Assembly: GCA_044892525.1 (NCBI GenBank)
Contig: CM097888.1
Span: forward strand, 47,802,001 to 47,866,000
Source: Schmidtea polychroa
Lineage: Eukaryota
Length of the DNA: 64,000 nt
Direction: 5' to 3'
Part shown: positions 35,989-62,389 of the stretch, one piece after another
Layout: every line of letters begins with the position of its first letter
Numbering within the stretch: the stretch's first letter is position 1
Program-made: the position numbers and the translations under genes
The notes under the pieces: model-generated
Databases searched by the model: none
Told to the model about the DNA's origin: nothing
Seen by the model: the letters and a program-made list of their open reading frames with translations, nothing else

Positions 35989-36055
<67 letters not shown>

Positions 36056-39000
36056 TTAATAATTTTCTATATGCATCATAAGGTCACAATGAGGTCTCTA
36101 GAACAGTTGTTAGTATCGTATTAGCTTGTTCCTGGTGGTATATTGGGTATTCAGAATATCATAAACTAAAGAGATTAAGTTCTACAAAACCTGTATTTTG
36201 CTATGATGTATCGTATAAGTTAAAATATCACTAAAATACAACTAAATTCAATTCACACTTGTATTTACCTTGCTCCATTCGTGATTCAATCTCTTTATAC
36301 GATCCGACGGGAATTTTTTTGAGACCCTGAACGAAAAATCCTTGAAATGGAGTTTGTCTAACTGGTAATCCTCCTTTCGGTTGAGCTTCTTTCGAAAGTA
36401 AATCACGAACATTTTCATTGTAAATTTCTAACATTGAAAATGTTACCTCATATCTCTGAATATAATATAAATTAGAATTTTTAAATAAGTTTCATAATAT
36501 TATAAATTCAAACAAAAATATCCTGAAATTCAAACTTTTATTAAAAACACTTATTTAGATTATATTAAAATCATATTGTTTAAATGATCTCTTTTCCCTG
36601 AATTGTTTTTCAAATTTCAAATCAACCATGCCAAACAAAGTTATTACTGAAGTGGTAAAAGTTGAATAAATTGACATTGTTGAAGGATTTGAGTTTTCAA
36701 CCGACGTGACTGAAAAAGATGAATATTTCATAAATAAATGACCAAAAAATGCCATTAATTACAGTTTCCATCATAAAGATTACCAAATCTGGAAGATTTT
36801 TAAATCTTTTTTGCAACTATTTTTCTCATATTATTAAATCATGTTTTACTAAGAAATCATCAATAAAACGGTTCAAGAAAACAGTGTTTCCAACTTTTTT
36901 CGGCCTATGGTCCCATTTTATTTTAATTCACTTCTATGGCCCTCCCATTTTAGTAGAATTTTAAACTTTATTCAATTACATTATATTAGCGGAGGGCTAG
37001 ACAAAGAGTACTGACGGCCACAGTACTGATCTTTTTACATGTATTTATAATGCATTTCTGAGAAAATGTTACTAAATTCTGATATATATTATATAACTTA
37101 CATTTTTTCATTAACGTCTTTCTGATTTGTCGAAAATTGTAGACAATATTAGTATACAATCAAATCTATTAATTCAAGTCGTTTTTAGCTTCAATAGGGT
37201 ATTAAACTTTTATTAAGTAGGCAAACAAGTCAAACATGTCTTTCAAAATTGTTAGTCACCTTCACCCTCTTTAGTAGGTAGCTAGTAGCCCGCGGGAGCA
37301 ATAGGGGGGGGGGGAGGGGGGTGGGGGTAAAAAATGTTGCAAACTTTTGATTGCATAATTTTTGCCGTAGACATTTTTTTGATTACATAATTGTTGCCGC
37401 ATGCTCCAATGATTTTTTTTCTGGGATTTTAAATACAAAAATTTTTTTTTCTATAAACAAGCCAAGGATAAATATTATTTGGGTGGGTCTCCTTGGTCCT
37501 GAGAATTTCAATAGAAAAGGTAGTCTACATTAATAAAGCATGGATTATTCAGACTATAGTGAGGGGGTCTCCTTGATCCTGGGATTTTCAATACAAAAAG
37601 ACGGTTTACACTAAAAAAGTTTTGTAATTCAAGGTCTCAGGATATTTTCAATACAAAAAGCCAAGGATAAACTTACCTGTGTGTAAAAATTTAATGCTGC
37701 GAAAGTTAACATATTTATTATAGGAATCTAAAAAGTGAGAGAAAATAATTAAGCATACAAACACAGCACACATAATGAAAAATACATACAAAATTAATGA
37801 AGTGTTTTTTTTGCGAAATTAACATTGATTAACATATAATTAACATATTAATATTTTCAAATTAATTAAAAAGTTATGCACAAAAAACTTTTGAATCAGA
37901 ATCCGACTGTTCTACCTTGAGCTTCAGAGAAAAAGAAGAAAATACATCGTAAGATTTAATTATAAAATAATTTAGAATATAACATTTCTTTAGATTTACA
38001 GATATTGAAGAAGGTCCTTCGACATCTTTGAATTTGCTGAAAAAAATAGCAAATCGTAAATTTTAATAAATTATTTTAACAAATTAATATTTTCATAGAA
38101 TTACAGAAAATGACAAAATTCGAAAGAAGATTACAAAAACTTAAAAAACTATTTTATCCATTCTTTCCTAAATGTCTTAAAAAAATAAATGTTTGGTGAT
38201 TACTTTATTTATTTATAATTATAAAAATATCTAACTTACATTTTTACGAAATGAATCCAAATAAAATATCATAAAATTCCTAAAAACACCTGAAATTTAA
38301 TTATCAGTATCCTATATTATAAATGATGACTAATAGTAATACTTAAGAACTTGAATAATGATCTCATAATTATATAAATCAAAATTCAAGTCCTAAAAAT
38401 TACTTCAATTCAAAAACTTACCTTAAAACGATTTTTGAAAAATTGAAAAAATGAAATTAAGTTAACATTGTCATAGTTAAATGGTGATTTAAATGGTGAC
38501 TCACCTCAACTGGTGTGCACAACAACGTATATTATAGATAATGTTAACTTTCGCAAACAGGTGTATCTACAGTCAGTAAAATCTTTTTTACACGGTCTTT
38601 TTTTACACAATTTTGAAATAATACGGTTCGTCAAGAAGAAATTTTAAAATTCTTTATACGTTATTTTTGATTTAACACGAATTCCAAAAACAAATTTTAA
38701 TTATTTACATGATTTTCTGCAATATATAATTTCAAAAGACCGCTTAAAAAAGATTTTACTGTATAAACATAATTTATGGATTATATTTATATACTATAGA
38801 TTGTTTTATATCAAATTCAGCACGATGTATAGTAATTATATTTGCAATAATACAATATTAAATGTTAAAAATATGAAAACAATTAAAATCCAATATTTAA
38901 ATTATGACAAAAATATAAATTCATAAATATATTATGTATAAAGAACATAAATAAATAAAATAAAATGTTTACTTTAATTGAAAATACACGTAATATGTCT

Positions 39001-42000
39001 TTGTTGGAAAAGATGGAAGGTAGAAAGAGAGTAGGTAGTTAGTAGCCCGCGGGAGCAATAGGGGGGGGGGGGGTGAAAAATGTTGCAAACTTTTGATTGC
39101 ATAATTTTTGCCGTAGACATTTTTTTGATTACATAATTGTTGCCGCATGCTCCAATGATTTTTTTTCTGGGATTTTAAATACAAAAATTTTTTTTTTCAA
39201 TAAACAAGCCAAGGATAAATATTATTTGGGTGGGTCTCCTTGGTCCTGAGAATTTCAATAGAAAAGGTAGTCTACACTAAAAAAGCATGGATTATTCAGA
39301 CTATAGTGAGGGGTCTCCTTGGTCCTGGGATTTTCAATACAAAAAGACGGTTTACACTAAAAAAGTTTTGTAATTCAAGGTCTCAGGATATTTTCAATAC
39401 AAATAGGTGGTCTACACTAAAAAACAGTGGCAATTTAAAGTCTCAGGATATTTTCAATACAAAAAGCCAAGGATAAATATTATTTGGGTGGGTCTCCTTG
39501 GTCCTGGGATTTTCAATACAAAAATCCGATTATCACTAAAAAAAGCCATAGTTATTTAAGATCTCAGGATATTTTCAATAGAAAAAGGTAGTCCTCCAAT
39601 AAAAAAGCATGGATTATTCAGACTATAGTGAGGGGTCTCCTTGGTCCTGGGATTTTCAATACAAAAAGACGGTTTACACTAAAAAAGTTTTGTAATTCAA
39701 GGTCTCAGGATATTTTCAATACAAATAGGTGGTCTACACTAAAAAACAGTGGCAATTTAAAGTCTCAGGATATTTTCAATACAAAAAGCCAAGGATAAAT
39801 ATTATTTGGGTGGGTCTCCTTGGTCCTGGGATTTTCAATACAAAAATCCGATTATCACTAAAAAAAGCCATAGTTATTTAAGATCTCAGGATATTTTCAA
39901 TAGAAAAAGGTAGTCCTCCAATAAAAAAGCATGGATTATTCAGACTATAGTGAGGGGTCTCCTTGGTCCTGGGATTTTCAATACAAAAAGACGGTTTACA
40001 CTAAAAAAGTTTTGTAATTCAAGGTCTCAGGATATTTTCAATACAAATAGGTGGTCTACACTAAAAAACAGTGGCAATTTAAAGTCTCAGGATATTTTCA
40101 ATACAAAAAGCCAAGGATAAATATTATTTGGGTGGGTCTCCTTGGTCCTGGGATTTTCAATACAAAAATCCGATTATCACTAAAAAAAGCCATAGTTATT
40201 TAAGATCTCAGGATATTTTCAATAGAAAAAGGTAGTCCTCCAATAAAAAAGCATGGATTTTTCACACTATAGTGAGGGGGGGGGTCTCCATAGTCCTAGG
40301 ATTTTCAATACAAAAAGACGGTTTACACTAAAAAAGTATGGTAATTCAAGGTCTCAGGTTATTTTCAATACAAAAAGGTGGTCTACACTAAAAAACATGG
40401 TAAATTTTTTAAAATAAAGCAAATTATGGGTCTAAATATTGAATTACATTAAATAATGGGTCTAAAAATTGAATTACAGTAATCAATGGTCAATAATTTT
40501 AATTTAAAGTTAAATAAGTAAATTAAAGGCTAAATTATGAAATTAAAGTAAATCAAGGTCCAAAATTTTAAACTAAAGTAAATGATGGGTCTAATAATTG
40601 AATTAAAGTAATCAATGGGATGAAATAAGTAAATTAAGGTTCAAATTAGTAAATTAAGATCCAAAAAAAAAATTAAATTAAAGTAATCAATGGGTTCAAA
40701 TGAGTTAATTAAGGTTCTAAAAAAAAATTAAATTAAATTAATCAACGGGTTCAAATAAGTTAATTAAGGTTCTAAAAAAAATTAAATTAAAGTAATCAAT
40801 GGGTTCAAATGAGTTAATTAAGGTTCTAAAAAAAATTAATTTAAATTAATCAACGGGTTCAAATAAGTTAATTGAGGTCTAAAATTTAAAATTAAAGCAA
40901 TCAATGAGTTCAAATAAGTAAATTAAGGTCCAAATATTTAAATTAAAGTAATCAATGGGCTCAAATAACTAAATAAAGGTTCTAAAAAATAAAATTAGAG
41001 ATAATTAAGGTTCAAAATTTAAAATTAAGTAATCAATGGTAAAAAAAAACTTTAAATTAAAGTTAAATAAGTAAATTTAAGTAATGTAATAAGTAAAAAA
41101 AGTTAAAGTTAGATTTTAAAAGTTATTTACAAAAAGTTGGAATAATAGTTGGTGATTGAGAATTGAAAATTTTAAATGAAAATTTTTAACGTATATTTTT
41201 TAAGATAATTTTTAATAGACATTTTTATGAAATATTTTTCAATGTTAATTTTAGATGAAAATTTTAATGAAATAATTATTTTTTAAGTTAATTTTTTATG
41301 AATTATTTTTCAATGTTAATTTTAGATGGAAAGTTTTATGTATTATTTTTCAATAGTAATTAAAGATGCAAATCATTGTCAATTAATCATTCACTACATG
41401 AAATTATTGGTAAAATATGAAAATAATGGCTATATTTGGTTGTAAATTATGGTAAAAAAAATTTAAATAAAGTAATACAAGGATAAATAGGTAAAATAAT
41501 GTTTTATTTTTAAATTATAGGTTCAAAACTTTAAATTAAAATTTATAAACAAAAAGTTGGAATAACCAACCGCTTCTGAGAAATAAAAATTTAAAATAAA
41601 AATTTTAAATAAAATTTTTAAGAAATAATTTTTTAAAGTCAAATTTTAATAGAAACTTTTATGGAATAATTTTTTTAAGTTAATTTTTATTGAAAATATT
41701 TATGAAATATTTTTTTTAAGTTAAATTTGAATAGAAATATTTATGGTATAATTTTTGAAGCTAATTTTAAATAGAAATTTTAATGAATTAATAATTGTCA
41801 AAGGCAAATTTAGATGCAAATTTCAATGATAATAAAAATTAATAATAAAATTAATTATTAATATTATTAAAAATAATAATCATAATAAAAATAATATTAA
41901 TATTAATAAAAATAATAANNNNNNNNNNNNNNNNNNNNNNNNNNNNNNNNNNNNNNNNNNNNNNNNNNNNNNNNNNNNNNNNNNNNNNNNNNNNNNNNNN

Positions 42001-45000
42001 NNNNNNNNNNNNNNNNNNNNNNNNNNNNNNNNNNNNNNNNNNNNNNNNNNNNNNNNNNNNNNNNNNNNNNNNNNACAACTATCAGGTACAACTAGATACC
42101 AAGTACATACAACCAACTACTAAGTACCTACAACTATGTACTAACAACCAACTAAGTATTCTTTATTGTATTTTATCAAATGATTTTTAAATTAATTTTT
42201 ATCTGTCTTCAAAAATATATTTAATTACAATCAGTAGAAAAAATCTTTTCAAAATGTCTAAATTTAACAAAAATGTTGATTTTCATCAAAAATGAATAAT
42301 TGTCAACTCATCACTACTTGGAATTCAAAATAATTTAAATTACAATGAAAGACTAATGAATTCTAATTTACAAAACATTCTTCTTTTAATTGATTACTAC
42401 TGACTTATTATTGCAAAGTAAAAATCACATTCAATAACTACTTATTGTTGATCAGTTTTATTATATATACTCTTAGTCTATCTGACAGGATGTTTTGACC
42501 CGCTAAGGGTACTGGTCGTAAGGGTACTGATAGTAAGGGTATTAGTCGTAAAGGTACTAGTCGTAAGGGTATTGGTAACACTCAACCACCAACTACCCAT
42601 TAACTAGCTACTAAGTACTATCAACCAGTTACCTGCTACCATGTACTAACAACCACCATCAAAACCTATCGAGAAATTAACAAATATATACAACTATATG
42701 ACAACAATCAGTAAACAACATTGCACCAACAACCAAGTACAAGATACCAACAACTTAATATCATCTACCAGTAACTATAAACACGTATTTTCAACTAGAT
42801 ACCAAGTACTTACAACAATATACCAAATGCTATCAGTTAAGTACTTACAACAAGATACCAAGACTATCAGCAAAATACTATCAACTAACAACACATAAAA
42901 ATAATAGCAATTAAATACAAAATATTCTTCATCACATGCAATATATTCTTGTCATCATCTACAACTAAACTCTATCAATCAGATACCAAATATTAACAAC
43001 CAGATACTTACAACCAACAACTATGTAATAACAAATTGATCTTTAAAAGAAAATACTCTTCACTTGAAAAATTGGATGAAAAATTAATAAAAAAAATGCA
43101 ATTCATTAATTAACTGATTACCAGTACTTGTATGATTTTCCAATAACTAGATAAAAATTAAATAAATCATTGTAAAAATTTAAATTATTCAAAATATAAT
43201 AAATATGAAAATGTAATGGACGAAAGAACTTTAAATTCTAGTCATTAATCATCCAGTAAATAAAAAAAATACTGATCATTCAAGTTAATCAACTAAGATA
43301 ATAAAGATAATAAGATCTAGTAGATAATTTATTTTGATTGAATAAATTAACTGAAATAAATTAATTTTAATTATTTTTTAAAAGTAATACACGTATATTC
43401 AAATCTATTTACTAATTCCTCAAATTATACACAAAATTCAGTATGAATTCATTACCATTATCAAAGTCAACAATCTACAATAAAAATAATTATCATTAAA
43501 TTCCAAAAGAGACTAGATAACTAATGATAACATCTAATAAACCAGTAAATTCATTTAAATGTCAATAATTGGTATATCCAAGTAAATTTTCTACTAAAAT
43601 CATCTAGAAAGGATCAAATTTCCATGAAATATCAATGTCTTTAAAGATAAGTATTTTATCGATAAATACCCTTAAAAGGCTATATATTTCCCTCAGACTA
43701 ATAAGATTGCTTAAAATCCCGTTTAAATAACTATAATTATATCTTTAATTTCTATTATCACGAATATTTCCCTATAAAACATGTAAAATCATTAACTCTA
43801 AACAATTTATAAAGTCTAATGACAAAAAAACAGTTATAATTAAATTTTTGTTCTAAAAATAAATCACTGTAATCGAAATTTAAAATAAATATTGCTTGAA
43901 ATTTGACTATACAATATAACTGAGTAGTTGCATAGAAAGATTAAATTTATCCATATTTCTTCAAATGATCATTTTTACCGATATTCAACCGATTTAATTA
44001 CTAATTAAAATCACCCGATAGATTTCTCCCAATAAAGATCAATTTTCTTTAGTCAACGTTTTAAGTCCATATTTCCAACTTATGTCGTTGTCCGTCTAAA
44101 TAAAGATAAAAATAATTTAAAGTTGATATCAATCCCAATTATCTGTAAAGATTTCATTGTCAAAACCAAGTAAATCGATCATTATCTCTACTTAATAAAA
44201 CATTGTTCTAAATTAATTTACTGTGCATTAATCACAACCTAATAAAAAGATATAATTTCACATTATTATTGATAAAACATTGATATTTTACCAACATCTC
44301 CCTTACAATGATATATTCCCATCTTAACCCATCCTTCATTAAATTCAATCGACTATATCTCCCTTACAATGATATATTCCCATTTTAACTCATCCCTCAT
44401 TAAATTTAACCGACTATATCTCCCTTAAAAGATCATATTTTCCCATCTTAACCGATCTCTCATTAAATCCCACCGACAATATCCCAGCTAAACCGATCTC
44501 TAACCAAATATTTCTACCCCTTTAAACATTTATCCGACTATATCCATTAATTCTACCCACTTGAATCCTCCTTTAATTCAATCAATCCTCTTAAAATTCT
44601 TAGAGAATTCTTCAAAAATATGAATTTTTATTAACTGTTATCGACATCCAAAATACATCTATGAAATAATTTAGTATCTAAATTCACGTAGTAAAAGATC
44701 AAAATTCACTAAAGTTTTCTACAAATATTTAACCTATCAAATACCTAACTAGAGATGATATATATTGATTGTTCATAAAAGCAAACTAAATCACAAATTT
44801 CTGTATATCCTACAATAATTATCAAGTAAATTAAAAGTCCTTGATAAAGTTAACTGGTTTCTTAGCTTATGTTTTTTTTAAAAGTTCATCAATGTGTAAA
44901 TATTCTTAGAAAATTATTGAAAAATTATTTAGTCAAATGCATTACAAAGTCATCTAAAATTAAACCAATTACTTAATTATTAACCTAACAGTCATTAAAA

Positions 45001-48000
45001 AAAATTAATTTTTATTTAAAATTTAACAAATTATCAAGAAATTCAATTAAAATCATCATTAAAACTTTAAATTTTTAATAAATCAACATGAAATTCTTAG
45101 AAAATATATGAAAAAAATATTATTACAAAGTCATATCCTATCACATGATTATTAACTTACTGTCATTAAAAATAATTTTTATTTAAAATTAAAAAAACAA
45201 TCAATAAAAATGCATCCAATTATCAAGAAATTAATTAAATTTATCTTAGAACTAACTTAAAATTTTTAAATATTCATTCAATCCACATGAAATTCATGAA
45301 AATGATCACTATCACAAAAACCATCAACTCAAAAAAAAATTACTAATGAATACCCTAAACAACAAAATTTATCTAAATAATCTTTCAAATTAATTCATTA
45401 AAATTGAAGACAACACGCTCTATTTTGTCATTAAATTCAATTAAAATTAAATAAATCAAGATAAGAACTTTGATAAAAAATATTATTCTAAAATGGTAAG
45501 AATTAACACTGTTGTGTTAAATGAAAAGGTAATTATTCTTTAAATCTAATTAACGTAGTCATAATTTTCTTTAATTTAACCCTTTATTTACTTAATTTAG
45601 TCCTTGTTTACCAAATATAGAAGTTTAAAATATAGACCATTGATTACTTTAATTAAAAAATGTATCCCTTAATTTACATAATTTCCATCTAAAATTATTT
45701 CAAAAAATTTTTTCTAAAATTTTCATTGAAAAATATTTCATAAAAATTTTCATTAAAAATTATCTTAAAAATTATTTCATAAAAATTTTCATTAAAAAAT
45801 TTCAATTCTCAAACACCTTCTATTATTTTGTTAATAAATTTTAAAATCTTACTTTAATTTGCTTTAATTTACTTATTTAAAAATTATTACTTTAATTTAC
45901 TTATTTAACTTTAATTTAAATTTTTTTACCATTGATTACTTAATTTAAAAATTTGGACCTTAATTAACTTTAATTTAATTTTTTAGAACCTTAATTTACT
46001 TTAATTTTAAATTTTAGACCATAATTTACTTAATTGAAAATTTTAGACTTTATTTTAGAACTTAATTGAAAATTTTAGACCTTAATTTACTTAATTGAAA
46101 ATTTGAGACCATAATTTGCTTAATTGAAAATTTTAGAACTTAATTTACTTAATTGAAATTTTAGACCTTAATTTACTTAAGTTTAAAAATATATACCATA
46201 ATTTACTGAAATTGAAAAATTTGGACCATAATTTACTGTAATTTAATTTTTTAGAACCATAATTTATTGTAATTGAAAAATTTGGACCTTAATTACTTAA
46301 TTGAAAATTTTAGACCTTAATTGAAAATTTTAGACCATAATTTTCATGTAAAATTGTCATTGAAAAAATTTTCATTTCTCAGGCGCCGTTTAGTAGGTAG
46401 TTAGGAGCCCGCTGCAAGTGCAAGCCTTTTTTTTTGCTGCATCTTTTTTTTGCTGCAGGTAATTGCGGCAGCGGGCTACTACAGAAATTTGTGATTTAGT
46501 TTGCTTTTATGAACAATCAATATATATCATCTCTAGTTAGGTATTTGATAGGTTAAATATTTGTAGAAAACTTTAGTGAATTTTGATCTTTTACTACGTG
46601 AATTTAGATACTAAATTATTTCATAGATGTATTTTGGATGTCGATAACAGTTAATAAAAATTCATATTTTTGAAGAATTCTCTAAGAATTTTAAGAGGAT
46701 TGATTGAATTAAAGGAGGATTCAAGTGGGTAGAATTAATGGATATAGTCGGATAAATGTTTAAAGGGGTAGAAATATTTGGTGAGAGATCGGTTAAGCTG
46801 GGATATTGTCGGTGAGATTTAATGAGAGATCGGATAAGGTGGGAATATACGATCTTTTAAGGGGGATATAGTTGGTGGGATTTAATGAGAGATCGGTTAA
46901 GATGGGAAAATATGATCTTTTAAGGGAGATATAGTCGGTTAAATTTAATGAGGGATGGGTTAAAATGGGAATATATCATTGTAAGGGAGATGTTGGTAAA
47001 ATATCAATGTTTTATCAATAATAATGTGAAATTATATCTTTTTATTAGGTTGTGATTAATGCACAGTAAATTAATTTAGAACAATGTTTTATTAAGTAGA
47101 GATAATGATCGATTTACTTGGTTTTGACAATGAAATCTTTACAGATAATTGGGATTGATATCAACTTTAAATTATTTTTATCTTTATTTAGACGGACAAC
47201 GACATAAGTTGGAAATATGGACTTAAAACGTTGACTAAAGAAAATTGATCTTTATTGGGAGAAATCTATCGGGTGATTTTAATTAGTAATTAAATCGGTT
47301 GAATATCGGTAAAAATGATCATTTGAAGAAATATGGATAAATTTAATCTTTCTATGCAACTACTCAGTTATAGTGTACAGTCAAATTTCAAGCAATATTT
47401 ATTTTAAATTTCGATTACAGTGATTTATTTTTAGAACAAAAATTTAATTATAACTGTTTTTTGTCATTAGACTTTATAAATTGTTTAGAGTTAATGATTT
47501 TACATGTTTTATAGGGAAATATTCGTGATAATAGAAATTAAAGATATAATTATAGTCATTTAAACGGGATTTTAAGCAATCTTATTAGTCTGAGGGAAAT
47601 ATATAGCCTTTTAAGGGTATTTATCGATAAAATACTTATCTTTAAAGACATTGATATTTCATGGAAATTTGATGCTTTCTAGATGATTTTAGTAGAAAAT
47701 TTACTTGGATATACCAATTATTGACATTTAAATGAATTTACTGGTTTATTAGATGTTATCATTAGTTATCTAGTCTCTTTTGGAATTTAATGATAATTAT
47801 TTTTATTGTAGATTGTTGACTTTGATAATGGTAATGAATTCATACTGAATTTTGTGTATAATTTGAGGAATTAGTAAATAGATTTGAATATACGTGTATT
47901 ACTTTTAAAAAATAATTAAAATTAATTTATTTCAGTTAATTTATTCAATCAAAATAAATTATCTACTAGATCTTATTATCTTTATTATCTTAGTTGATTA

Positions 48001-51000
48001 ACTTGAATGATCAGTATTTTTTTTATTTACTGGATGATTAATGACTAGAATTTAAAGTTCTTTCGTCCATTACATTTTCATATTTATTATATTTTGAATA
48101 ATTTAAATTTTTACAATGATTTATTTAATTTTTATCTAGTTATTGGAAAATCATACAAGTACTGGTAATCAGTTAATTAATGAATTGCATTTTTTTTATT
48201 AATTTTTCATCCAATTTTTCAAGTGAAGAGTATTTTCTTTTAAAGATCAATTTGTTATTACATAGTTGTTGGTTGTAAGTATCTGGTTGTTAATATTTGG
48301 TATCTGATTGATAGAGTTTAGTTGTAGATGATGACAAGAATATATTGCATGTGATGAAGAATATTTTGTATTTAATTGCTATTATTTTTATGTGTTGTTA
48401 GTTGATAGTATTTTGCTGATAGTCTTGGTATCTTGTTGTAAGTACTTAACTGATAGCATTTGGTATATTGTTGTAAGTACTTGGTATCTAGTTGAAAATA
48501 CGTGTTTATAGTTACTGGTAGATGATATTAAGTTGTTGGTATCTTGTACTTGGTTGTTGGTGCAATGTTGTTTACTGATTGTTGTCATATAGTTGTATAT
48601 ATTTGTTAATTTCTCGATAGGTTTTGATGGTGGTTGTTAGTACATGGTAGCAGGTAACTGGTTGATAGTACTTAGTAGCTAGTTAATGGGTAGTTGGTGG
48701 TTGAGTGTTACCAATACCCTTACGACTAGTACCTTTACGACTAATACCCTTACTATCAGTACCCTTACGACCAGTACCCTTAGCGGGTCAAAACATCCTG
48801 TCAGATAGACTAAGAGTATATATAATAAAACTGATCAACAATAAGTAGTTATTGAATGTGATTTTTACTTTGCAATAATAAGTCAGTAGTAATCAATTAA
48901 AAGAAGAATGTTTTGTAAATTAGAATTCATTAGTCTTTCATTGTAATTTAAATTATTTTGAATTCCAAGTAGTGATGAGTTGACAATTATTCATTTTTGA
49001 TGAAAATCAACATTTTTGTTAAATTTAGACATTTTGAAAAGATTTTTTCTACTGATTGTAATTAAACATATTTTTGAAGACAGATAAAAATTAATTTAAA
49101 AATCATTTGATAAAATACAATAAAGAATACTTAGTTGGTTGTTAGTACATAGTTGTAGGTACTTAGTAGTTGGTTGTATGTACTTGGTATCTAGTTGTAC
49201 CTGATAGTTGTNNNNNNNNNNNNNNNNNNNNNNNNNNNNNNNNNNNNNNNNNNNNNNNNNNNNNNNNNNNNNNNNNNNNNNNNNNNNNNNNNNNNNNNNN
49301 NNNNNNNNNNNNNNNNNNNNNNNNNNNNNNNNNNNNNNNNNNNNNNNNNNNNNNNNNNNNNNNNNNNNNNNNNNNNNNNNNNNNTTATTATTTTTATTAA
49401 TATTAATATTATTTTTATTATGATTATTATTTTTAATAATATTAATAATTAATTTTATTATTAATTTTTATTATCATTGAAATTTGCATCTAAATTTGCC
49501 TTTGACAATTATTAATTCATTAAAATTTCTATTTAAAATTAGCTTCAAAAATTATACCATAAATATTTCTATTCAAATTTAACTTAAAAAAAATATTTCA
49601 TAAATATTTTCAATAAAAATTAACTTAAAAAAATTATTCCATAAAAGTTTCTATTAAAATTTGACTTTAAAAAATTATTTCTTAAAAATTTTATTTAAAA
49701 TTTTTATTTTAAATTTTTATTTCTCAGAAGCGGTTGGTTATTCCAACTTTTTGTTTATAAATTTTAATTTAAAGTTTTGAACCTATAATTTAAAAATAAA
49801 ACATTATTTTACCTATTTATCCTTGTATTACTTTATTTAAATTTTTTTTACCATAATTTACAACCAAATATAGCCATTATTTTCATATTTTACCAATAAT
49901 TTCATGTAGTGAATGATTAATTGACAATGATTTGCATCTTTAATTACTATTGAAAAATAATACATAAAACTTTCCATCTAAAATTAACATTGAAAAATAA
50001 TTCATAAAAAATTAACTTAAAAAATAATTATTTCATTAAAATTTTCATCTAAAATTAACATTGAAAAATATTTCATAAAAATGTCTATTAAAAATTATCT
50101 TAAAAAATATACGTTAAAAATTTTCATTTAAAATTTTCAATTCTCAATCACCAACTATTATTCCAACTTTTTGTAAATAACTTTTAAAATCTAACTTTAA
50201 CTTTTTTTACTTATTACATTACTTAAATTTACTTATTTAACTTTAATTTAAAGTTTTTTTTTACCATTGATTACTTAATTTTAAATTTTGAACCTTAATT
50301 ATCTCTAATTTTATTTTTTAGAACCTTTATTTAGTTATTTGAGCCCATTGATTACTTTAATTTAAATATTTGGACCTTAATTTACTTATTTGAACTCATT
50401 GATTGCTTTAATTTTAAATTTTAGACCTCAATTAACTTATTTGAACCCGTTGATTAATTTAAATTAATTTTTTTTAGAACCTTAATTAACTCATTTGAAC
50501 CCATTGATTACTTTAATTTAATTTTTTTTAGAACCTTAATTAACTTATTTGAACCCGTTGATTAATTTAATTTAATTTTTTTTTAGAACCTTAATTAACT
50601 CATTTGAACCCATTGATTACTTTAATTTAATTTTTTTTTTGGATCTTAATTTACTAATTTGAACCTTAATTTACTTATTTCATCCCATTGATTACTTTAA
50701 TTCAATTATTAGACCCATCATTTACTTTAGTTTAAAATTTTGGACCTTGATTTACTTTAATTTCATAATTTAGCCTTTAATTTACTTATTTAACTTTAAA
50801 TTAAAATTATTGACCATTGATTACTGTAATTCAATTTTTAGACCCATTATTTAATGTAATTCAATATTTAGACCCATAATTTGCTTTATTTTAAAAAATT
50901 TACCATGTTTTTTAGTGTAGACCACCTTTTTGTATTGAAAATAACCTGAGACCTTGAATTACCATACTTTTTTAGTGTAAACCGTCTTTTTGTATTGAAA

Positions 51001-54000
51001 ATCCTAGGACTATGGAGACCCCCCCCCTCACTATAGTGTGAAAAATCCATGCTTTTTTATTGGAGGACTACCTTTTTCTATTGAAAATATCCTGAGATCT
51101 TAAATAACTATGGCTTTTTTTAGTGATAATCGGATTTTTGTATTGAAAATCCCAGGACCAAGGAGACCCACCCAAATAATATTTATCCTTGGCTTTTTGT
51201 ATTGAAAATATCCTGAGACTTTAAATTGCCACTGTTTTTTAGTGTAGACCACCTATTTGTATTGAAAATATCCTGAGACCTTGAATTACAAAACTTTTTT
51301 AGTGTAAACCGTCTTTTTGTATTGAAAATCCCAGGACCAAGGAGACCCCTCACTATAGTCTGAATAATCCATGCTTTTTTATTGGAGGACTACCTTTTTC
51401 TATTGAAAATATCCTGAGATCTTAAATAACTATGGCTTTTTTTAGTGATAATCGGATTTTTGTATTGAAAATCCCAGGACCAAGGAGACCCACCCAAATA
51501 ATATTTATCCTTGGCTTGTTTATTGAAAAAAAAAATTTTTGTATTTAAAATCCCAGAAAAAAAATCATTGGAGCATGCGGCAACAATTATGTAATCAAAA
51601 AAATGTCTACGGCAAAAATTATGCAATCAAAAGTTTGCAACATTTTTCACCCCCCCCCCCCTATTGCTCCCGCGGGCTACTAACTACCTACTCTCTTTCT
51701 ACCTTCCATCTTTTCCAACAAAGACATATTACGTGTATTTTCAATTAAAGTAAACATTTTATTTTATTTATTTATGTTCTTTATACATAATATATTTATG
51801 AATTTATATTTTTGTCATAATTTAAATATTGGATTTTAATTGTTTTCATATTTTTAACATTTAATATTGTATTATTGCAAATATAATTACTATACATCGT
51901 GCTGAATTTGATATAAAACAATCTATAGTATATAAATATAATCCATAAATTATGTTTATACAGTAAAATCTTTTTTAAGCGGTCTTTTGAAATTATATAT
52001 TGCAGAAAATCATGTAAATAATTAAAATTTGTTTTTGGAATTCGTGTTAAATCAAAAATAACGTATAAAGAATTTTAAAATTTCTTCTTGACGAACCGTA
52101 TTATTTCAAAATTGTGTAAAAAAAGACCGTGTAAAAAAGATTTTACTGACTGTAGATACACCTGTTTGCGAAAGTTAACATTATCTATAATATACGTTGT
52201 TGTGCACACCAGTTGAGGTGAGTCACCATTTAAATCACCATTTAACTATGACAATGTTAACTTAATTTCATTTTTTCAATTTTTCAAAAATCGTTTTAAG
52301 GTAAGTTTTTGAATTGAAGTAATTTTTAGGACTTGAATTTTGATTTATATAATTATGAGATCATTATTCAAGTTCTTAAGTATTACTATTAGTCATCATT
52401 TATAATATAGGATACTGATAATTAAATTTCAGGTGTTTTTAGGAATTTTATGATATTTTATTTGGATTCATTTCGTAAAAATGTAAGTTAGATATTTTTA
52501 TAATTATAAATAAATAAAGTAATCACCAAACATTTATTTTTTTAAGACATTTAGGAAAGAATGGATAAAATAGTTTTTTAAGTTTTTGTAATCTTCTTTC
52601 GAATTTTGTCATTTTCTGTAATTCTATGAAAATATTAATTTGTTAAAATATTTTATTAAAATTTACGATTTGCTATTTTTTTCAGCAAATTCAAAGATGT
52701 CGAAGGACCTTCTTCAATATCTGTAAATCTAAAGAAATGTTATATTCTAAATTATTTTATAATTAAATCTTACGATGTATTTTCTTCTTTTTCTCTGAAG
52801 CTCAAGGTAGAGCAGTCGGATTCTGATTCAAAAGTTTTTTGTGCATAACTTTTTAATTAATTTGAAAATAATAATATGTTAATTATATGTTAATCAATGT
52901 TAATTTCGCAAAAAAAACACTTCATTAATTTTGTATATATTTTTCATTATGTGTGCTGTGTTTGTATGCTTAATTATTTTCTCTCACTTTTTAGATTCCT
53001 ATAATAAATATGTTAACTTTCGCAGCATTAAATTTTTACACACAGGTAAGTTTGTGTGTTCCTATAACATATATTTATTGATTTTTTTAGATTATAGGCT
53101 ATGTTAACTTTCTCACTTAGGTGTACATACAAATTCACCTGCATGTTAAAATTTCAATAGCAGTTACACCTGCTTATTTATTATAGGAATCCAGATAGAG
53201 TAAAGAAATTAATAAAACATACAATTACGATGAGTGCAATTTCTATAATATCAAACATGCAAACAAGCGATAAAATACACCACTTAAAAAATATACCCAT
53301 TTATAAAAAAAATATTTATTAAAATTATTGTTAAAAAGTCATTTACATTTTATTAAAAAATATTTTAAAAAAATCATGGGCGAGTGGGTTTATAAATTTT
53401 AAAATTTTGATATTTATTTAATTATTTAATAAATTTAAAAATTAATAATAACCTTATAATAATTTAATTATATTTGATTTATGATAGAAATATTTATTTA
53501 ATGTACGCTTTAATAATTTAATGAATAAAATTTCATTTTCGTTTGCAAACCTAATAAAATACTGTTTCGTTTATTTTTAAATTTACAATAAATATGGTTA
53601 TTTAATTTATATATTTATTTTTTATTGCACAAAATATTTGTTTTAAAGCACTTTTACATATAAATCTTATTATGAATTTTTATTGTTTGATTGAATAAAA
53701 TTATTAAATTTTCTTAAATTTGTAATTATTTCAAATTAATGGACATTGATATAAAATTTAAAAGCATTGTTGAAAATATGCAATAGATTAATAAATAATT
53801 TAATTAAAATTTAAATAATAAACAAAAGCTTAATTTAATTTGAAATATGAAAACAAGATAAATAAAATTTGTATAAATTTTTGTTTAAATATTTTAAAAC
53901 ACTTAAAAAATTAAATTTATTTGTTACAATAATATCCAATAACAATATTGTTGTTTGTCATACATGGATGATTCCGTATTTATAGCATTAATAATAATCG

Positions 54001-57000
54001 CCCATTGTTACATTACGATAACAAATGAAAAATGAAAATAATAATTTTTATTTTCTTACTAAATATGCACGAAACTTAAACATGCTAAAATCAAGATAAG
54101 AGTCAAGAAAATCAAAGAAAATGCTATTTGAGAAATAATAACTTCTCATTTCATCATTAAGTTTTTCTATTGAATTCCTTGCGGAAAATATTTGGACAAA
54201 ATTATATTTTATTTATTAATATTCATATAATGAAATATATTTATCAAGTTTACCATTGAGTTAGATGAATTTGTTTCCATTTTCTTGAAGAGTTCATCAC
54301 AAATGACTGGAACAATTCCTCTGAAAGAAATACATAAGATTATAACCAAGATATTTTAGACAGACTTAAAAATAATACTATTTATTATTATTATTATCAG
54401 CCCCCAGAAGAGGGGGGGGTCAGGAGGGTCTTTTGACATGGGCCTCTTAATTTAAGGGTCCCCAAACAACACTTTTTTCATACTAGTAGTAGAGGAGTTT
54501 AAGCGTACTCAAACGCATAAAAAATTATTTAAGATCAACCATTCTCCAGGATCATGTAAATGGTTTGGGGACGCTAAATATTAATTGTGATATTGCAAGA
54601 AATGTGGACTTCCGAATTAATAAGTTCGTTTGCAGCTCTAAAAGCTCGAAGAGCTCATTTTTAAATGTATTTATTAATTAATATATTTCGAATTAGATTT
54701 TTTAAAGTTTTGAAATAATAAATTTTTAATCAGTAAAAAGTATACATTTTTGTTATATTTTTCATTATATAAGGGCCACATAAGATGTCAGACCTGGGCC
54801 TCCAANNNNNNNNNNNNNNNNNNNNNNNNNNNNNNNNNNNNNNNNNNNNNNNNNNNNNNNNNNNNNNNNNNNNNNNNNNNNNNNNNNNNNNNNNNNNNNN
54901 NNNNNNNNNNNNNNNNNNNNNNNNNNNNNNNNNNNNNNNNNNNNNNNNNNNNNNNNNNNNNNNNNNNNNNNNNNNNNNNNNNNNNNNNNNNNNNNNNNNN
55001 NNNNNNNNNNNNNNNNNNNNNNNNNNNNNNNNNNNNNNNNNNNNNNNNNNNNNNNNNNNNNNNNNNNNNNNNNNNNNNNNNNNNNNNNNNNNNNNNNNNN
55101 NNNNNNNNNNNNNNNNNNNNNNNNNNNNNNNNNATTTCAAAATTTTGTAATATCAAAATCATACTTATTAGCTCCATATCCAACCATAGAGTATGATTTT
55201 CCTGACCCGGTTTGACCATATGCAAATAACGAGCAATTGTAACCAATAAAGGCATTTTCTAGCACGCTTTTACCTAGATCTTCAAAAACACTTTTCTGGC
55301 TAGCATATCGAGAATTTAGTCCATCGGGAATTAGAAATCCGTTTGTGTCTTCCACAAATTCATCATGAGACCTTTCAAAAATGACAAATATTATAATATG
55401 TTTTATAAATAAAATATGATAAAAATTTAAACAAATATTCTATTTTAACTTGGAATACAAGAATAATATTGTGTTTCATTAAGGTATGATAAAATATAGA
55501 AAATAAAACATTGCGAGACGAGAAACGCTCTTCAAAGTTTATACTATAAATAGATATGCACTGTCTAAATTTGATTAAGTTTCCCACACGGTTGATGCCT
55601 TGGGAATAAATAACTATTCTTCTTTAATACAATATAGCTTTTCTTCTATCAGTTATATGATTTATCATCTTTGAGACATGGCTTCTCTTTAATTTTTTCG
55701 ATACTCTATTGTTTTCAATCTATAATTTCTTGTTTTATTAAATTTCTCCATAGTTTCTGACTTCCATAAACCTCTAGAACTTGTCAATTTTGGTATAAAA
55801 GTTAATTATTGACTAAATCCCAAAAATCAACATGATTTGTTCAGTGATACCAATTCATTAGAGCTGTTAATTACTGATCCAAATTAACTGAACATCTCTT
55901 AACAATGGTATCTGAGCTCTAGAGAAATCTAATTATCCAATGTGATAAAGCGCATACGTCAGCCATATTCGAGATTATCCAATTTGTAAGTTAATTAGTT
56001 CCCACAAAAATCCAATCAAAAGTGATTTCTCATATTCATTCCCCATAAAGCATCATATTAAGAACCAGTTCCCAAGCAAATCAACCCTGCATAAACCAAT
56101 CCCAAACAAATCAACCCTTGCATAAACCAATTCCAAAGCAAATCAACCCTGCATAAACCGATCCCCAACCAAATCAACCCTGCATAAACCGATCCCCAAC
56201 CAAATCAACCCTTGCATAAACCAATCCCCAAACAAATCAACCCTGCATAAACCAATCCTCAACCAAATCAACCCTGCATAAACCAATCCCCAACCAAATC
56301 AACCCTGCATAGATCAATCCCCAAACAAATCAACCCTGCATAAACCAATCCCCAACCAAATCAACCCCACATAAATCAATCCCCAAACAAATCAACCCTG
56401 CATAAACCAATCCCCAAACAAATCAACCCTGCATAAACCAATCCCCAAACAAATCAACCCTGCATAAACCAATCCCCAAGCACATCAACCCTTGCATAAA
56501 CCAATCCCCAAACAAATCAACCCTGCATAAACCAATCCCCAAGCACATCAACCCTTGGATAAACCAATTCCCAAACGTATCAACCCTTGCACAAATTAAC
56601 CCTCAACCAATCATCTTGTGACCCATTCATTACACCGTTAAATAAAAGTTACCATTTACCTCTTATTATTTATCGACCTCAAACAATGAAGAAATCCAAA
56701 AAATGATTTTTCACTAAACAAATTGAATGAAAAATTCCGCAAAATGTGAAAAAAAAAGATTTTAATTAAAAGCTGAAAAGAGAGAAAAAAAAGGTTGAAT
56801 ATATAATTAAAATATTTATTAATAAATAATTTACCAATAAGAATAATCGAAAGTGAAAACTTTTTTATCAGTTGAATCTACAAAATTATAAGTTTAAAAT
56901 TCATTTTGAGCAATTAACTTGCTTTCGGGATTTGTTATTATCGTTGTATTTCCTTGCATATCTATTGTTAATTTCGCTGATCTATCCTTTTCTCTTTGAT

Positions 57001-58722: not shown

Positions 58723-59639
58723 CTGAAGAAAAATAAAACAAATAAATNNNNNNNNNNNNNNNNNNNNNNNNNNNNNNNNNNNNNNNNNNNNNNNNNNNNN
58801 NNNNNNNNNNNNNNNNNNNNNNNNNNNNNNNNNNNNNNNNNNNNNNNNNNNNNNNNNNNNNNNNNNNNNNNNNNNNNNNNNNNNNNNNNNNNNNNNNNNN
58901 NNNNNNNNNNNNNNNNNNNNNNNNNNNNNNNNNNNNNNNNNNNNNNNNNNNNNNNNNNNNNNNNNNNNNNNNNNNNNNNNNNNNNNNNNNNNNNNNNNNN
59001 NNNNNNNNNNNNNNNNNNNNNNNNNNNNNNNNNNNNNNNNNNNNNNNNNNNNAATAACTGAAATATAAAAATAGAGAAATATGAATCTCCAGATTTAATC
59101 AGTAATCCAAAATTAATATTTGTCAAAACCGGAAATTTCACAAAACGCATTATTCGGTTTTTCTGTTAAATTGTTTTAAGTGGTAATTAACAATTACAGT
59201 TCCTGCAACAGGAAAATTAGGGGCAATGTTAGGGAGAAAGTAATTAAAATAGAAAATTCACCCGTTTCATCAGCAATGGCTGTTAATAATAAATTCTGTC
59301 GAATAGAAACAAATATTTGATTTTATATTAATTAAAACAAATTGTCGAATATATGTACATTGTTTATTTTATGAGCAAATAATCTTTTTATTACTATAAC
59401 GCTTGTCAAGTTTTGTTTTGAATTTTCCTGAAGCACAAAGAATATGTTTATTTTATTCTTTGGTTTATTTATGTGTTTGTTTTAATCTATTTATATATTT
59501 ATAGAAACTCTAGATTATAGATGGATACCATTTGTGCATAGATTTTGTTTTATAAGCACTCAATTAGAGTATACATTATTGCGTATTTTATTTATAATCT
59601 AAAAAAGAGTTTCTACACACAATTCTGAAATTTAGTAAT

Positions 59640-60300
59640 ATCTATAATTCACGTTGGTGTGCACACAAATTGAGGTGACTCACCATTTACGTGAAAATGA
59701 AGTTATTCAATTTCATTTATTCAATTTCTTAAAAATTGTTTTCAACTAATTTTTTAAATTTCAAGTAACTTTTAAGACTTGAATTTTGATTTTATATAAT
59801 TATGAGATTATTATTCAAGTTCTTAAATATTGCTGTTTGTCACCATTTATAATATAACATATTGATAATTAAATTTCAGGTGTTTTTTTAGGAATTTTAT
59901 GACATTTTATGAATTTATTTGGAATTATTTCGATAAAATGTAAGTTAGATATATTTTTAACTATAAATAAATAAACTAATCACCGAATACATTAATTTTT
60001 TTAATACAATTAAGAAAGAAGCGGCGTACATGTATGAAATAGTTTTTTGAATTTTTATAATCTTCTTTCTGCATCTCATTTTCCCCATTCTCAAAGGCAT
60101 TAATAAGCCGAATTTTGTCATTTTCTGTATATCTATAAAAATATTAATTTATTTAAATTTACGAATTGTAAATTTCTTTCAGCAAATTCTGATGTTTTGT
60201 AATTTAATGAATAAATCTTACATTGTCAGATTTCCACCTTCGCGAAAAGGCAGTGTATCCTGTAAATCTAAAGAGTTTATATTCAATTTGTACCTCTATT
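59640..60300. repeat. Diverged copy of the sequence at ~52120-52790 (inverted at ~37940-38600)
   Basis: Shared blocks such as GGTGTGCAC, GACTTGAATTTTGATTTATATAATTATGAGAT and CTGTAAATCTAAAGA. Confidence 0.8.
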
Positions 60301-61183: not shown

Positions 61184-61785
61184 AAATCAAGAGCAATGTA
61201 ACAGTTTATCTAATATTTGAACAATTTCTATTTCGACAATAGCTGTAAAACTGTAACCTCGCTCTGTCAGTATTTTCATCATATAATCTGCCAAATATAT
61301 ACATTTCAAATCCATTCTGCGAACTGCATGAAGCAATGCATATTCTTCATAAATTAGCATAATATGTGGTGCATCATCTTCAAAATTTAGAACGACACCT
61401 CCTGTACTAATTGAAGCGTACAAAGAAAGAATTGCTTGAATTGCAACACAAATGGTTTGAGCTTTGAATATTTCATATATAATTTGAGTCATATTTTTTC
61501 TGTTAACTTCTAAATTCTGTGGCGTTTCGGTAAGAAGAACTGAATACTCTCCTGGCGTATTTTTAAATTCAATGTAGAATATATGATGCCAGGTCTTTTT
61601 CAAATCATCCAAATTAATAACAATATCGTGTTCAGTCGCAGATTTAAGAGTTAAAATACTTCTCTTAGGCAGAGCCTCACAACCAACATAGCTATCTTTT
61701 TGATCCATACAAACCATAACTCCCTTATGTCTTGGTCTAAAAGTCCGAAAAACAAATCGTTCCAGAAGCATCGAAAATCCACAAG
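61184..61785 (-). pseudogene. ACT: Truncated, diverged, intronless actin pseudogene (about residues 20-222)
   Basis: RPRHKGVMV, QKDSYVG, WHHIFY, VLLTE, AIQAILSLYAS, YMMKILTERGYSF align to actin. Many radical substitutions, indels at both ends, no N- or C-terminus. Confidence 0.9.
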
Positions 61786-62389
61786 AATTGAATAACTCAG
61801 CAATCAAAAAAATTTCAGACAAAATGAATAAACATTTAAACTCGACAATTCGTGTCTGCAACCAAAAAATAACACGCGTGCGCACACAGACGCGAATAGT
61901 CTGAATTAACAATATACATGTGAAATAGAAACATTAAATAAAATAAAAAACTATTTTAATATTGTTGGGTCTTGAAAATTGATTATTCAACACGAGAAGT
62001 CAGGTTAACATTTTCATAAAAAACAAAACCATATAAAATTTGTATTATATATTGCAGTTGAAACCCGTTTATATGAACTTTTAGGACAATAACAAATGAA
62101 AATATTATCCGAATGATACAATTTTTAATAAAAGTTCAAAAATGTTAACATTATATAAAAAGCTCAAACAAAAAATGTAAAGCAAAATTGCATACTTTAC
62201 CGCATCCGTATTATCTTTTATCCAATCATAAATCGTGCTCCTTTTAAAGCGCAATTCATGACATCTAAATAATACTAATGCACTTTTATTTATTCTTTCC
62301 ACAATTGTCAATTTTTTTTATCAACTCATAACATACTTTTTCTTTTTTTTTATTTTCATTTAAAATTTAATAAGTTATAATGTATTTAA

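What the first reader, a model, noticed from the sequence alone, without database searches (positions are those of the whole stretch)
37669..53053. 15-kb palindrome formed by fold-back of the element's right part plus 1.36 kb of host flank
Seen: 37669-44805 is the reverse complement of 46480-53053 and includes the right TSD (AAAGAG at 39024-39029) and host DNA beyond it. The outer junction truncates the left TIR at ~396 bp with AAA microhomology; the inner junction has TA microhomology. The arms differ by several SNPs (e.g. ~43610, ~43730, ~43910) and by array copy number, so they are not a plain duplicated contig. Inference: two template switches (MMBIR/FoSTeS-like) or aberrant transposition or replication of the element. 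Since the kinesin is transcribed through it, the pre-mRNA could form ~6.5 kb of dsRNA (A-to-I editing, endo-siRNA, splicing effects) and the DNA could extrude a cruciform.
Basis: partly seen in the sequence, partly recalled or inferred. Interest (0 to 1): 0.75.

Follow-up and report, generated by a model that had tools for sequence, protein, structure and literature searches.

The report
Intronic fold-back duplication of a transposon end
A 15.4-kb near-perfect palindrome sits in one intron of a kinesin-3 gene; it looks like an ordinary fold-back inverted duplication of a non-coding transposon's right half plus 1.36 kb of flank, if it is not an assembly or cloning artefact.

Summary
37669-44805 is the reverse complement of 46480-53053, around a 1,674-bp single-copy spacer. 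Outside tandem arrays the arms differ by 10 substitutions (about 99.84% identity). They also differ in two arrays.

The duplicated unit is the right 5.2 kb of a non-coding element plus its target-site duplication and 1,355 bp of intron flank. The element has 6-bp duplications (CTCTTT) and AGTAGG... termini, and its ends match for at least 385 bp.

The left junction cuts the element's left end at 396 bp with AAA shared. The inner junction shares TA. Both microhomologies occur by chance in 8-9% of simulated junctions.

- The inner boundary lies exactly at the foot of the most stable DNA hairpin in 18 kb, which is built from terminus-like motifs.
- The two N gaps are exact mirror images, so the central contig's orientation and the arms' continuity rest on scaffolding alone.

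The whole structure lies in one intron of a minus-strand kinesin-3 gene.

Best reading: a break inside the element, fold-back priming, about 6.6 kb of copying, then microhomology end-joining. This is a known kind of rearrangement. An assembly or cloning artefact cannot be excluded here. dsRNA from the intron is plausible but untested. A cruciform is unlikely with this spacer.

The parts
36234..36491 (-). Kinesin-3 motor exon just downstream in the gene (left of the palindrome); bounds are those of the open stretch that holds the exon
   Evidence: Pfam Kinesin profile 112-186; PDB 7wrg_A residues 146-210
37267..37272 (+). Left copy of the 6-bp target-site duplication (CTCTTT)
   Evidence: identical 6-mer in direct orientation at 51693-51698; chance about 1e-3
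37273..37668 (+). Remnant of the element's left end (T1), 396 bp, cut inside a sub-repeat
   Evidence: 95% identical to 39030-39403 and 93% to the reverse complement of 51458-51692; starts AGTAGGTAGCTAGTAGCCCGC
37669..37671 (.). Outer novel junction: AAA shared by the cut left end and the inverted flank
   Evidence: Alignment A1; expected by chance in 8% of junctions
37669..39023 (-). Inverted copy of the intron flank to the right of the element (copy of 51699-53053)
   Evidence: 4 substitutions in 1,355 bp; carries a dispersed repeat also present at 59627-60069
39024..39029 (-). Inverted copy of the right target-site duplication (reads AAAGAG on the + strand)
39030..44805 (-). Inverted copy of the element's right part (terminus T2 at 39030); with 37669-39029 it forms the left arm
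39253..40397 (.). 322-bp sub-terminal tandem array, 3.5 units, in the left arm
   Evidence: the right arm has 1.9 units at 50906-51529
41919..42074 (.). N gap in the left arm (156)
   Evidence: mirror image of the gap at 49212-49384
44296..44502 (.). 61-bp tandem array of the left arm whose unit make-up differs from the right arm's (46783-46975); holds 23 of the 33 mismatches
44806..46479 (+). Single-copy spacer (fold-back loop); its right 0.8 kb is a 73%-identical, same-orientation relative of the arm's sub-terminal arrays (50026-50596)
46392..46481 (.). T3/T4 hairpin. T3 (46392-46412, + strand) is a full 21-nt terminus-like motif with 1 mismatch. T4 (46471-46481, - strand) holds only the inner 11 nt. 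The foot of the stem coincides with the inner boundary of the right arm.
   Evidence: DNA fold -22.9 kcal/mol, z = -3.5; strongest of 1,745 windows, next best -13.7
46480..51692 (+). Right part of the element (template copy); right terminus T5 at 51692
49212..49384 (.). N gap in the right arm (173)
51693..51698 (+). Right copy of the target-site duplication (CTCTTT)
51699..53053 (+). Intron flank that served as template; runs on without a break into 53054 onward
54212..54355 (-). Kinesin-3 motor exon just upstream in the gene (right of the palindrome); bounds are those of the open stretch that holds the exon
   Evidence: PDB 7wrg_A residues 123-146, which abut residues 146-210 matched by the exon at 36234-36491

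Best explanation
This is a chromosomal fold-back inverted duplication inside a resident, non-coding DNA transposon.

The element (37273-51692 as it now stands) had inserted into an intron of a kinesin-3 gene and made the CTCTTT duplication.

The later steps are inferred:
1. The element suffered a double-strand break or a collapsed fork in its left or central part.
2. The right-hand end was resected.
3. Its 3' end folded back about 1.7 kb and primed on its own strand with 2 nt (TA), right at the foot of a GC-rich hairpin made of terminus-like motifs.
4. Synthesis ran about 6.6 kb outward through the element's right end, the target-site duplication and 1,355 bp of intron.
5. The new end was joined to the other broken end, 396 bp into the left terminal repeat, through 3 nt (AAA).
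6. Element DNA between the two break ends was lost.
7. Since then the arms have gained about 0.16% substitutions and three array changes.

Shown: the anatomy, which arm is the template, both junction sequences, the position of the hairpin and the intronic location.

The structure has no function of its own. Its likely effect, which is inferred, is a long intramolecular duplex in the kinesin pre-mRNA intron.
For: - Arms, spacer and junctions.
- The direct 6-bp duplication pairs T1 with T5 (chance about 1e-3). T1 is cut mid-unit, while 53053/53054 shows no discontinuity. So the right arm is the template.
- T1 is only 93-95% like T5, but the copy T2 matches T5 almost exactly, apart from one poly-G indel and the array-length difference. 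The left arm is therefore a recent copy and not the element's natural left half.
- The spacer length and 2-bp inverted microhomology fall in the range of sequenced human fold-back duplications. Yeast fold-backs run through ssDNA hairpins whose loops can be thousands of nt.
- The inner boundary is at the foot of the single most stable local hairpin. The post-hoc chance is about 1e-3.
- Both novel junctions lie inside contiguous sequence, not at gaps.
Against: - There is no read-level or independent-assembly support.
- The four contig ends at the two gaps mirror each other to the base, so the arms were not assembled independently.
- The central contig can be flipped without changing anything visible.
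- The arm differences (0.16% plus array lengths) are what two haplotypes would also show.
- The microhomologies are at chance level.
- The hairpin coincidence was noticed after the fact.
- The original structure of the element is unknown, because no other copy was found.
Confidence: 0.58

Rival explanations
1. Assembly or cloning artefact. Only one copy of the arm exists in the genome. The second arm and its junctions would come from a chimeric clone or read (an in-vitro or in-E. coli fold-back), or from placing the second haplotype in inverted orientation.
For: - Gap ends mirror each other to the base.
- The scaffold has 7 gaps in 64 kb.
- The central contig is itself a symmetric palindrome bounded by the two gaps.
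- The arm differences are of allelic size and include array-length differences.
- Polymerase template switches in vitro also favour hairpins (established knowledge).
Against: - Two separate junctions without homology (37668/9 and 44805/6) lie inside contigs. A graph error through repeats cannot create them, so two chimeric events that agree on one structure would be needed.
- The outer contigs are each anchored in unique kinesin exons in the right order and orientation.
- The arms are not identical, so this is not one contig used twice.
Confidence: 0.3
2. Transposase-driven aberrant ('alternative') transposition or re-replication. Termini of the element on sister chromatids would be used together, giving a composite insertion with inverted element and flank sequences, as described for maize Ac/Ds.
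For: - A terminus-like motif pair (T3/T4) sits at the inner boundary, and T4 lacks its outer 10 nt there.
- Composite insertions with inverted duplications of element sequences are documented.
Against: - Neither novel junction is at a complete terminus. One is 396 bp inside the terminal repeat.
- There is no new target-site duplication.
- The copied end T2 carries the same flank and duplication as T5, so no end moved to a new site.
- No transposase or integrase is encoded in the element.
Confidence: 0.07
3. A natural element with very long terminal inverted repeats (foldback-type), or a pre-existing host palindrome whose arms were homogenised by gene conversion, so that an insertion in one arm was copied into the other.
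For: - Long arms rich in tandem sub-repeats with a central loop resemble foldback-type elements.
- The very high arm identity would fit ongoing gene conversion.
Against: - The inverted repeat includes a target-site duplication and 1.36 kb beyond the element's own terminus.
- There are no direct repeats at 37669 and 53053.
- T1 with its matching CTCTTT would be left unexplained.
Confidence: 0.05

Closest known systems
Fold-back inverted duplications with a single-copy spacer (human constitutional cases, PMC3907307; yeast foldback inversions through ssDNA hairpins, PMC7467729)
   Same: An inverted and a direct copy are separated by a normal-copy spacer of kilobase size. The spacer/inversion junction has 2-bp inverted microhomology. 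A second junction stabilises the product. A hairpin-forming sequence sits at the junction.
   Different: This case is small (6.6 kb copied) and interstitial. It was closed by rejoining to the other break end a few kb away, not by a telomere or translocation. It lies wholly inside a transposon and an intron. The stable hairpin is not itself the fold-back stem but abuts the priming site.
MMBIR/FoSTeS and DUP-TRP/INV-DUP rearrangements (PMC4352052)
   Same: Two template switches or junctions with little homology give an inverted extra copy.
   Different: No pre-existing inverted repeat can be shown to mediate the first junction, and there is no triplicated segment. The data cannot separate replicative switching from break-induced fold-back priming followed by end joining.
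Mu killer of maize and Ac/Ds composite insertions (PMC3440606; bioRxiv 10.1101/2020.01.07.897926)
   Same: Both have an inverted duplication of part of a DNA transposon, including a terminal repeat, placed where read-through from a host gene could make a long hairpin RNA.
   Different: No transcript, small RNA or silencing data exist here. The duplicated part is non-coding. The host is an unidentified AT-rich animal-like genome, not a plant.
Maverick/Polinton elements, as the possible family of the duplicated element (PMC8097293, PMC5499653)
   Same: It has a 6-bp target-site duplication and terminal inverted repeats of several hundred bp. Its termini begin AGT (AGTAGG...CCTACT), close to the reported (AGT)2//(ACT)2 end motif.
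   Different: It has no polymerase, integrase, capsid or any other recognisable gene. The interior is A/T-rich tandem arrays. At most it is a non-autonomous derivative, and other superfamilies with 6-bp duplications were not excluded.

Membership tests
Fold-back inverted duplication | Inverted and non-inverted copies separated by a non-duplicated spacer (reported range 766-70,466 bp) | tested here: met
   The spacer 44806-46479 is 1,674 bp and has no second copy in the window apart from 65-78% similar array relatives.
Fold-back inverted duplication | [quoted passage not shown] | tested here: inconclusive
   TA (2 bp) is present, but 8.9% of simulated spacers in this window reach 2 bp or more.
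Fold-back inverted duplication | Copy number: arms at twice the depth of the spacer and flanks, with junctions present in single molecules | not testable with these tools
   No reads are available, and no independent assembly was found.
Fold-back inverted duplication | Secondary event that closes or stabilises the copied end | tested here: met
   The junction 37668/37669 joins to the element's cut left end with AAA shared.
DUP-TRP/INV-DUP (inverted-repeat-mediated) | First junction inside a pair of pre-existing inverted repeats | tested here: inconclusive
   The innermost 303 bp of the arms are identical, and the mismatch cluster further out is an array rearrangement rather than old divergence. 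A short pre-existing repeat would be invisible.
Alternative-transposition composite insertion | Novel junctions at exact element termini, with a new target-site duplication | tested here: not met
   The outer junction is 396 bp inside the terminal repeat. T4 holds only 11 of 21 terminal nt. T2 keeps T5's flank and duplication.
Maverick/Polinton | 6-bp target-site duplication | tested here: met
   CTCTTT at 37267-72 and 51693-98.
Maverick/Polinton | Terminal inverted repeats of tens to more than 1,000 bp, with an AG/AGT end motif | tested here: met
   At least 385 bp at 93-95% identity; termini AGTAGG...CCTACT.
Maverick/Polinton | Encodes a protein-primed DNA polymerase and a retrovirus-like integrase (definition in PMC5499653), plus capsid genes | tested here: not met
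   The longest open stretch in 44806-51692 is 82 aa, and the ten longest have no Pfam match at E <= 0.1.
Foldback-type element (natural long inverted repeats) | Direct target-site duplication flanking the outer ends of the inverted repeats; the repeats consist of element DNA only | tested here: not met
   The flanks of 37669 and 53053 share no direct repeat. The arms contain an internal target-site duplication and intron flank.
Mu killer-type hairpin-RNA locus | Inverted duplication of part of a transposon, including a terminal repeat | tested here: met
Mu killer-type hairpin-RNA locus | Transcribed from a host promoter into a hairpin RNA that yields small RNAs against the family | not testable with these tools
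   Only the position inside one intron of a minus-strand kinesin-3 gene could be shown.

The most novel reading that the evidence does not exclude
The palindrome is real and acts as a hairpin-RNA locus. Read-through in the kinesin intron would make a duplex of more than 6 kb covering the terminal repeats of a Maverick-like non-autonomous family, feeding small RNAs against that family. Hairpins built from the element's own terminus motifs would then be preferred sites for the fold-back events that create such loci, so the element would seed its own silencing trigger.
Probability: 0.1. Interest if true: 0.6.

Novelty: new member of a known kind. Interest (0 to 1): 0.3.

Why it matters
If real, this is a cleanly resolved germline example of a small fold-back duplication. 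Both junctions, the template arm and a candidate structure (a terminus-derived hairpin) at the priming site are all readable. It would place a potential double-stranded RNA of more than 6 kb, covering a transposon's terminal repeats, inside an intron of a motor-protein gene. That could matter for splicing, RNA editing or small-RNA production.

If it is an artefact, it warns that mirrored gaps and near-identical inverted contigs in draft scaffolds can imitate such events.

Either way the kind of rearrangement is well known. Nothing here changes current models.

Tried and rejected
- **Exact-protein look-ups.** Four window ORFs were tried to reach other assemblies of the locus: MULE, an arm ORF, a kinesin exon ORF and an ORF across the T2 junction. 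None is on record.
- **Collection scans.** The 21-nt terminus in metagenome and viral contigs, and the 27-nt array core in metagenome contigs, gave no match. The canonical structure of the element is therefore unknown.
- **Organism.** The MULE ORF's best relative is only 78% identical, and named relatives are scattered (a snail, crustaceans, a mussel, frogs). Rfam and tRNA scans were empty. The organism stays unidentified.
- **Old inverted repeat at the centre.** I tested whether the inner 1 kb is an older repeat that mediated the event. Rejected: the mismatches are confined to one small array whose units are reshuffled, and the innermost 303 bp are identical.
- **Self-priming by T3/T4.** Rejected: the sequence to the right of T4 is not the reverse complement of the sequence to the left of T3.
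- **Spacer as a TA-duplicating insertion into a perfect palindrome.** Rejected: the spacer's two ends are not inverted repeats of each other.
- **Inversion heterozygosity mixed by the assembler.** It does not explain the 44805/44806 junction.
- **Duplicated gap flanks** (a common haplotype artefact). None found.
- **Weak inverted repeat beside the outer boundary** (52962-53059 / 53125-53224, 74%). It is not among the stable local folds and was not used.
Full report
**Observation**

The window is an AT-rich (about 27% GC) eukaryotic scaffold with seven N runs.

Inverted-repeat search, self-BLAST and piecewise global alignment all show that 37669-44805 is the reverse complement of 46480-53053. 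A 1,674-bp spacer (44806-46479) lies between them, and the whole structure spans 15,385 bp.

The arms differ as follows:
- Ten scattered substitutions outside tandem arrays, giving about 99.84% identity.
- 23 mismatches confined to a three-unit 61-63-bp array. The arms hold different unit sets there, [a,a',b] against [a',b,b'].
- A net 581-bp difference in a 322-bp array (3.5 against 1.9 units).
- Four 1-2-nt indels.
- The innermost 303 bp are identical.

**The gaps (tested first, as asked)**

The gaps 41919-42074 and 49212-49384 occupy exactly mirrored positions: 41918 pairs with 49385 and 42075 with 49211.
- Each follows a pure A/T low-complexity run.
- They lie in non-coding DNA, so frame is not an issue.
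- Their stated lengths differ by 17.
- Continuity across them cannot be shown from the sequence. I did not look up their letters.

Two consequences follow:
- The arms were not assembled independently. Either the gap is set by the sequence itself or the arms share a common consensus.
- The central contig 42075-49211 has ends that are reverse complements of each other. Its orientation, and therefore which arm touches which end of the spacer, rests on scaffolding only.

**What was duplicated**

The motif AGTAGGTAG[C/T]TAGTAGCCCGC occurs at 37273 (+, T1), 39030 (+, T2) and 51692 (-, T5).

CTCTTT flanks T1 on the left and T5 on the right in direct orientation. Its reverse complement flanks T2. The chance of such a 6-mer match is about 1e-3.

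So T1 and T5 are the ends of one insertion. T2 with its flank is a copy of T5 with its flank. Three results support this:
- T1 is 93-95% like T2 and T5 over about 385 bp, whereas T2 matches T5 almost exactly, apart from one poly-G indel and the array-length difference.
- T1 stops at 396 bp in the middle of a sub-repeat, where the other copies continue ...GGATAAA.
- 53053/53054 shows no discontinuity.

Hence the right arm is the template and the left arm the copy.

The element has no coding capacity. The longest open stretch is 82 aa, and the ten longest have no Pfam match. Its interior is a series of A/T-rich tandem arrays.

**Family of the element**

A 6-bp duplication, terminal repeats of several hundred bp and AGT-starting termini match what is reported for Mavericks/Polintons. 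The defining genes are absent, so it cannot be filed there. A non-autonomous derivative is possible. Other superfamilies were not excluded.

No other copy was found in any collection I could scan.

**Host gene**

Open stretches on the minus strand match the Pfam kinesin motor profile in order, at positions 51-95, 112-186, 181-235, 233-267, 259-302 and 295-327. An FHA domain follows further downstream.

The exon piece at 54212-54355 aligns to residues 123-146 of PDB 7wrg_A (E = 0.06, a weak match over 24 residues). The exon piece at 36234-36491 aligns to residues 146-210 of the same chain. No exon is therefore missing.

The element and the palindrome lie in a single intron of roughly 17.7 kb in a kinesin-3 gene. 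Whether the gene is transcribed was not tested.

**Junctions**

In simulations on this window such microhomologies arise by chance in 8.1% and 8.9% of junctions. They fit microhomology-primed events but do not prove them.

A new observation concerns 46392-46481, at the right end of the spacer.
- It holds a complete terminus-like motif (T3) facing an 11-nt partial one (T4).
- The two form a GC-rich hairpin of -22.9 kcal/mol as DNA, z = -3.5.
- It is by far the most stable local fold among 1,745 windows across 36.5-54.5 kb. The next best is -13.7, and the mean is -5.8 with sd 2.8.
- Its 3' foot (46481) is the inner boundary of the right arm.
- For a junction placed at random in 8.2 kb, the chance of falling within 2 nt of either foot is about 1e-3. 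This figure is post hoc.

The right 0.8 kb of the spacer is a 73% relative of the arm's sub-terminal arrays in the same orientation. The spacer therefore looks like the end of a related, older element copy.

**Mechanism (inferred)**

1. A break or collapsed fork occurred inside the element.
2. The right-hand end was resected.
3. Its 3' end folded back about 1.7 kb and primed with TA next to the hairpin stem. Stacking on the stem could stabilise so short a primer.
4. Synthesis ran about 6.6 kb outward to 53053.
5. The new end was joined to the other break end in T1 through AAA.
6. The DNA in between was lost.

If the central contig is in fact flipped, the same event reads differently. The break would be at the foot of the hairpin, which would explain why T4 is incomplete, and priming would be 1.7 kb away.

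Either way this matches documented fold-back inverted duplications. Human cases have spacers of 766-70,466 bp and 2-8 bp microhomology. Yeast foldbacks run through ssDNA hairpins with loops up to thousands of nt.

**Rival explanations**

- *Artefact (about 0.3).* In favour: the mirrored gaps, the draft quality of the scaffold and allelic-size differences between the arms. Against: two homology-free junctions inside contigs that agree on one structure, and outer contigs anchored in ordered kinesin exons.
- *Alternative transposition.* It fails because no novel junction is at a complete terminus and T2 keeps T5's flank.
- *A natural long-repeat element or a homogenised host palindrome.* It fails because the arms contain the target-site duplication and intron flank, and T1 would be unexplained.

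**Consequences (inferred)**

The pre-mRNA would contain both arms and could fold into a duplex of more than 6 kb. This resembles Mu killer and the Ac composite insertions, which produce hairpin RNA and small RNAs.

Cruciform extrusion in duplex DNA is unlikely with a 1.7-kb spacer. This rests on established knowledge and was not tested.

**Verdict**

The structure is a new instance of a known kind of rearrangement, not verifiable from one draft scaffold, and of modest interest.

In my reasoning, not in any tool call, note or this report, I twice wrote short sequences from memory:
- A stretch of a kinesin-3 motor, used to judge exon continuity. That judgement is now replaced.
- A terminal motif of about ten nucleotides from a known protein-primed virus, written while thinking about terminal reiterations.

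Noticed in passing
window 18252-19643 (+): Intact 463-aa ORF with FLYWCH zinc finger and MULE transposase domains. The closest relative in the protein collection is only 78% identical. Named relatives are scattered across a freshwater snail, crustaceans, a mussel and frogs.
   Followed up: partly
window 14830-17174 (-): Three consecutive ORFs (219, 204 and 354 aa) in a 35-36% GC stretch, with no Pfam match even at E <= 5. They may be one disrupted gene of an unknown mobile element next to the MULE.
   Followed up: partly
window 4001-8000: A GC-rich island (42-44% against about 27% overall) with ORFs at 4202-5197 (weak BED zinc-finger match, below the Pfam cut-off), 5446-5994 and 7010-7471, all otherwise unassigned.
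   Followed up: partly
window 61187-61912 (-): A 241-aa ORF matches only part of the actin profile (positions 44-200 of 410, E = 3e-28) and has many unusual residues. It is probably an actin-derived pseudogene or fragment.
   Followed up: no
window 56063-56613: A tandem array with a period of about 31 bp, 88-91% identical between copies, lies in the intron between the first two kinesin motor exons.
   Followed up: no
window 38122-38552, 52170-52600 and 59627-60069: The duplicated intron flank carries a roughly 440-bp dispersed repeat that has a third, 80%-identical copy 7 kb to the right.
   Followed up: no
window 52962-53059 and 53125-53224: An imperfect inverted repeat (74% over about 100 nt) straddles the point where the copied segment ends (53053). 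It is not among the stable local folds.
   Followed up: partly
window 37304-37332, 39061-39073 and 51650-51661: G runs of about 12-13 nt (about 29 nt with three interruptions in the old left end) begin about 32 nt inside each element terminus. Their length differs between T1 and T2/T5, and by 1 nt between the arms.
   Followed up: no
window 35990-36060: A long trinucleotide A/T-rich microsatellite (it reads as a poly-Ile run in one frame) lies directly beside a kinesin motor exon.
   Followed up: no
window 20224-57049 (-): The kinesin's closest solved relative is PDB 7wrg_A ('Kinesin-like protein', 960 aa), ahead of KIF13B and KIF1A motors. The motor is followed by an FHA domain, so it is a kinesin-3. 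The gene extends beyond what I modelled.
   Followed up: partly
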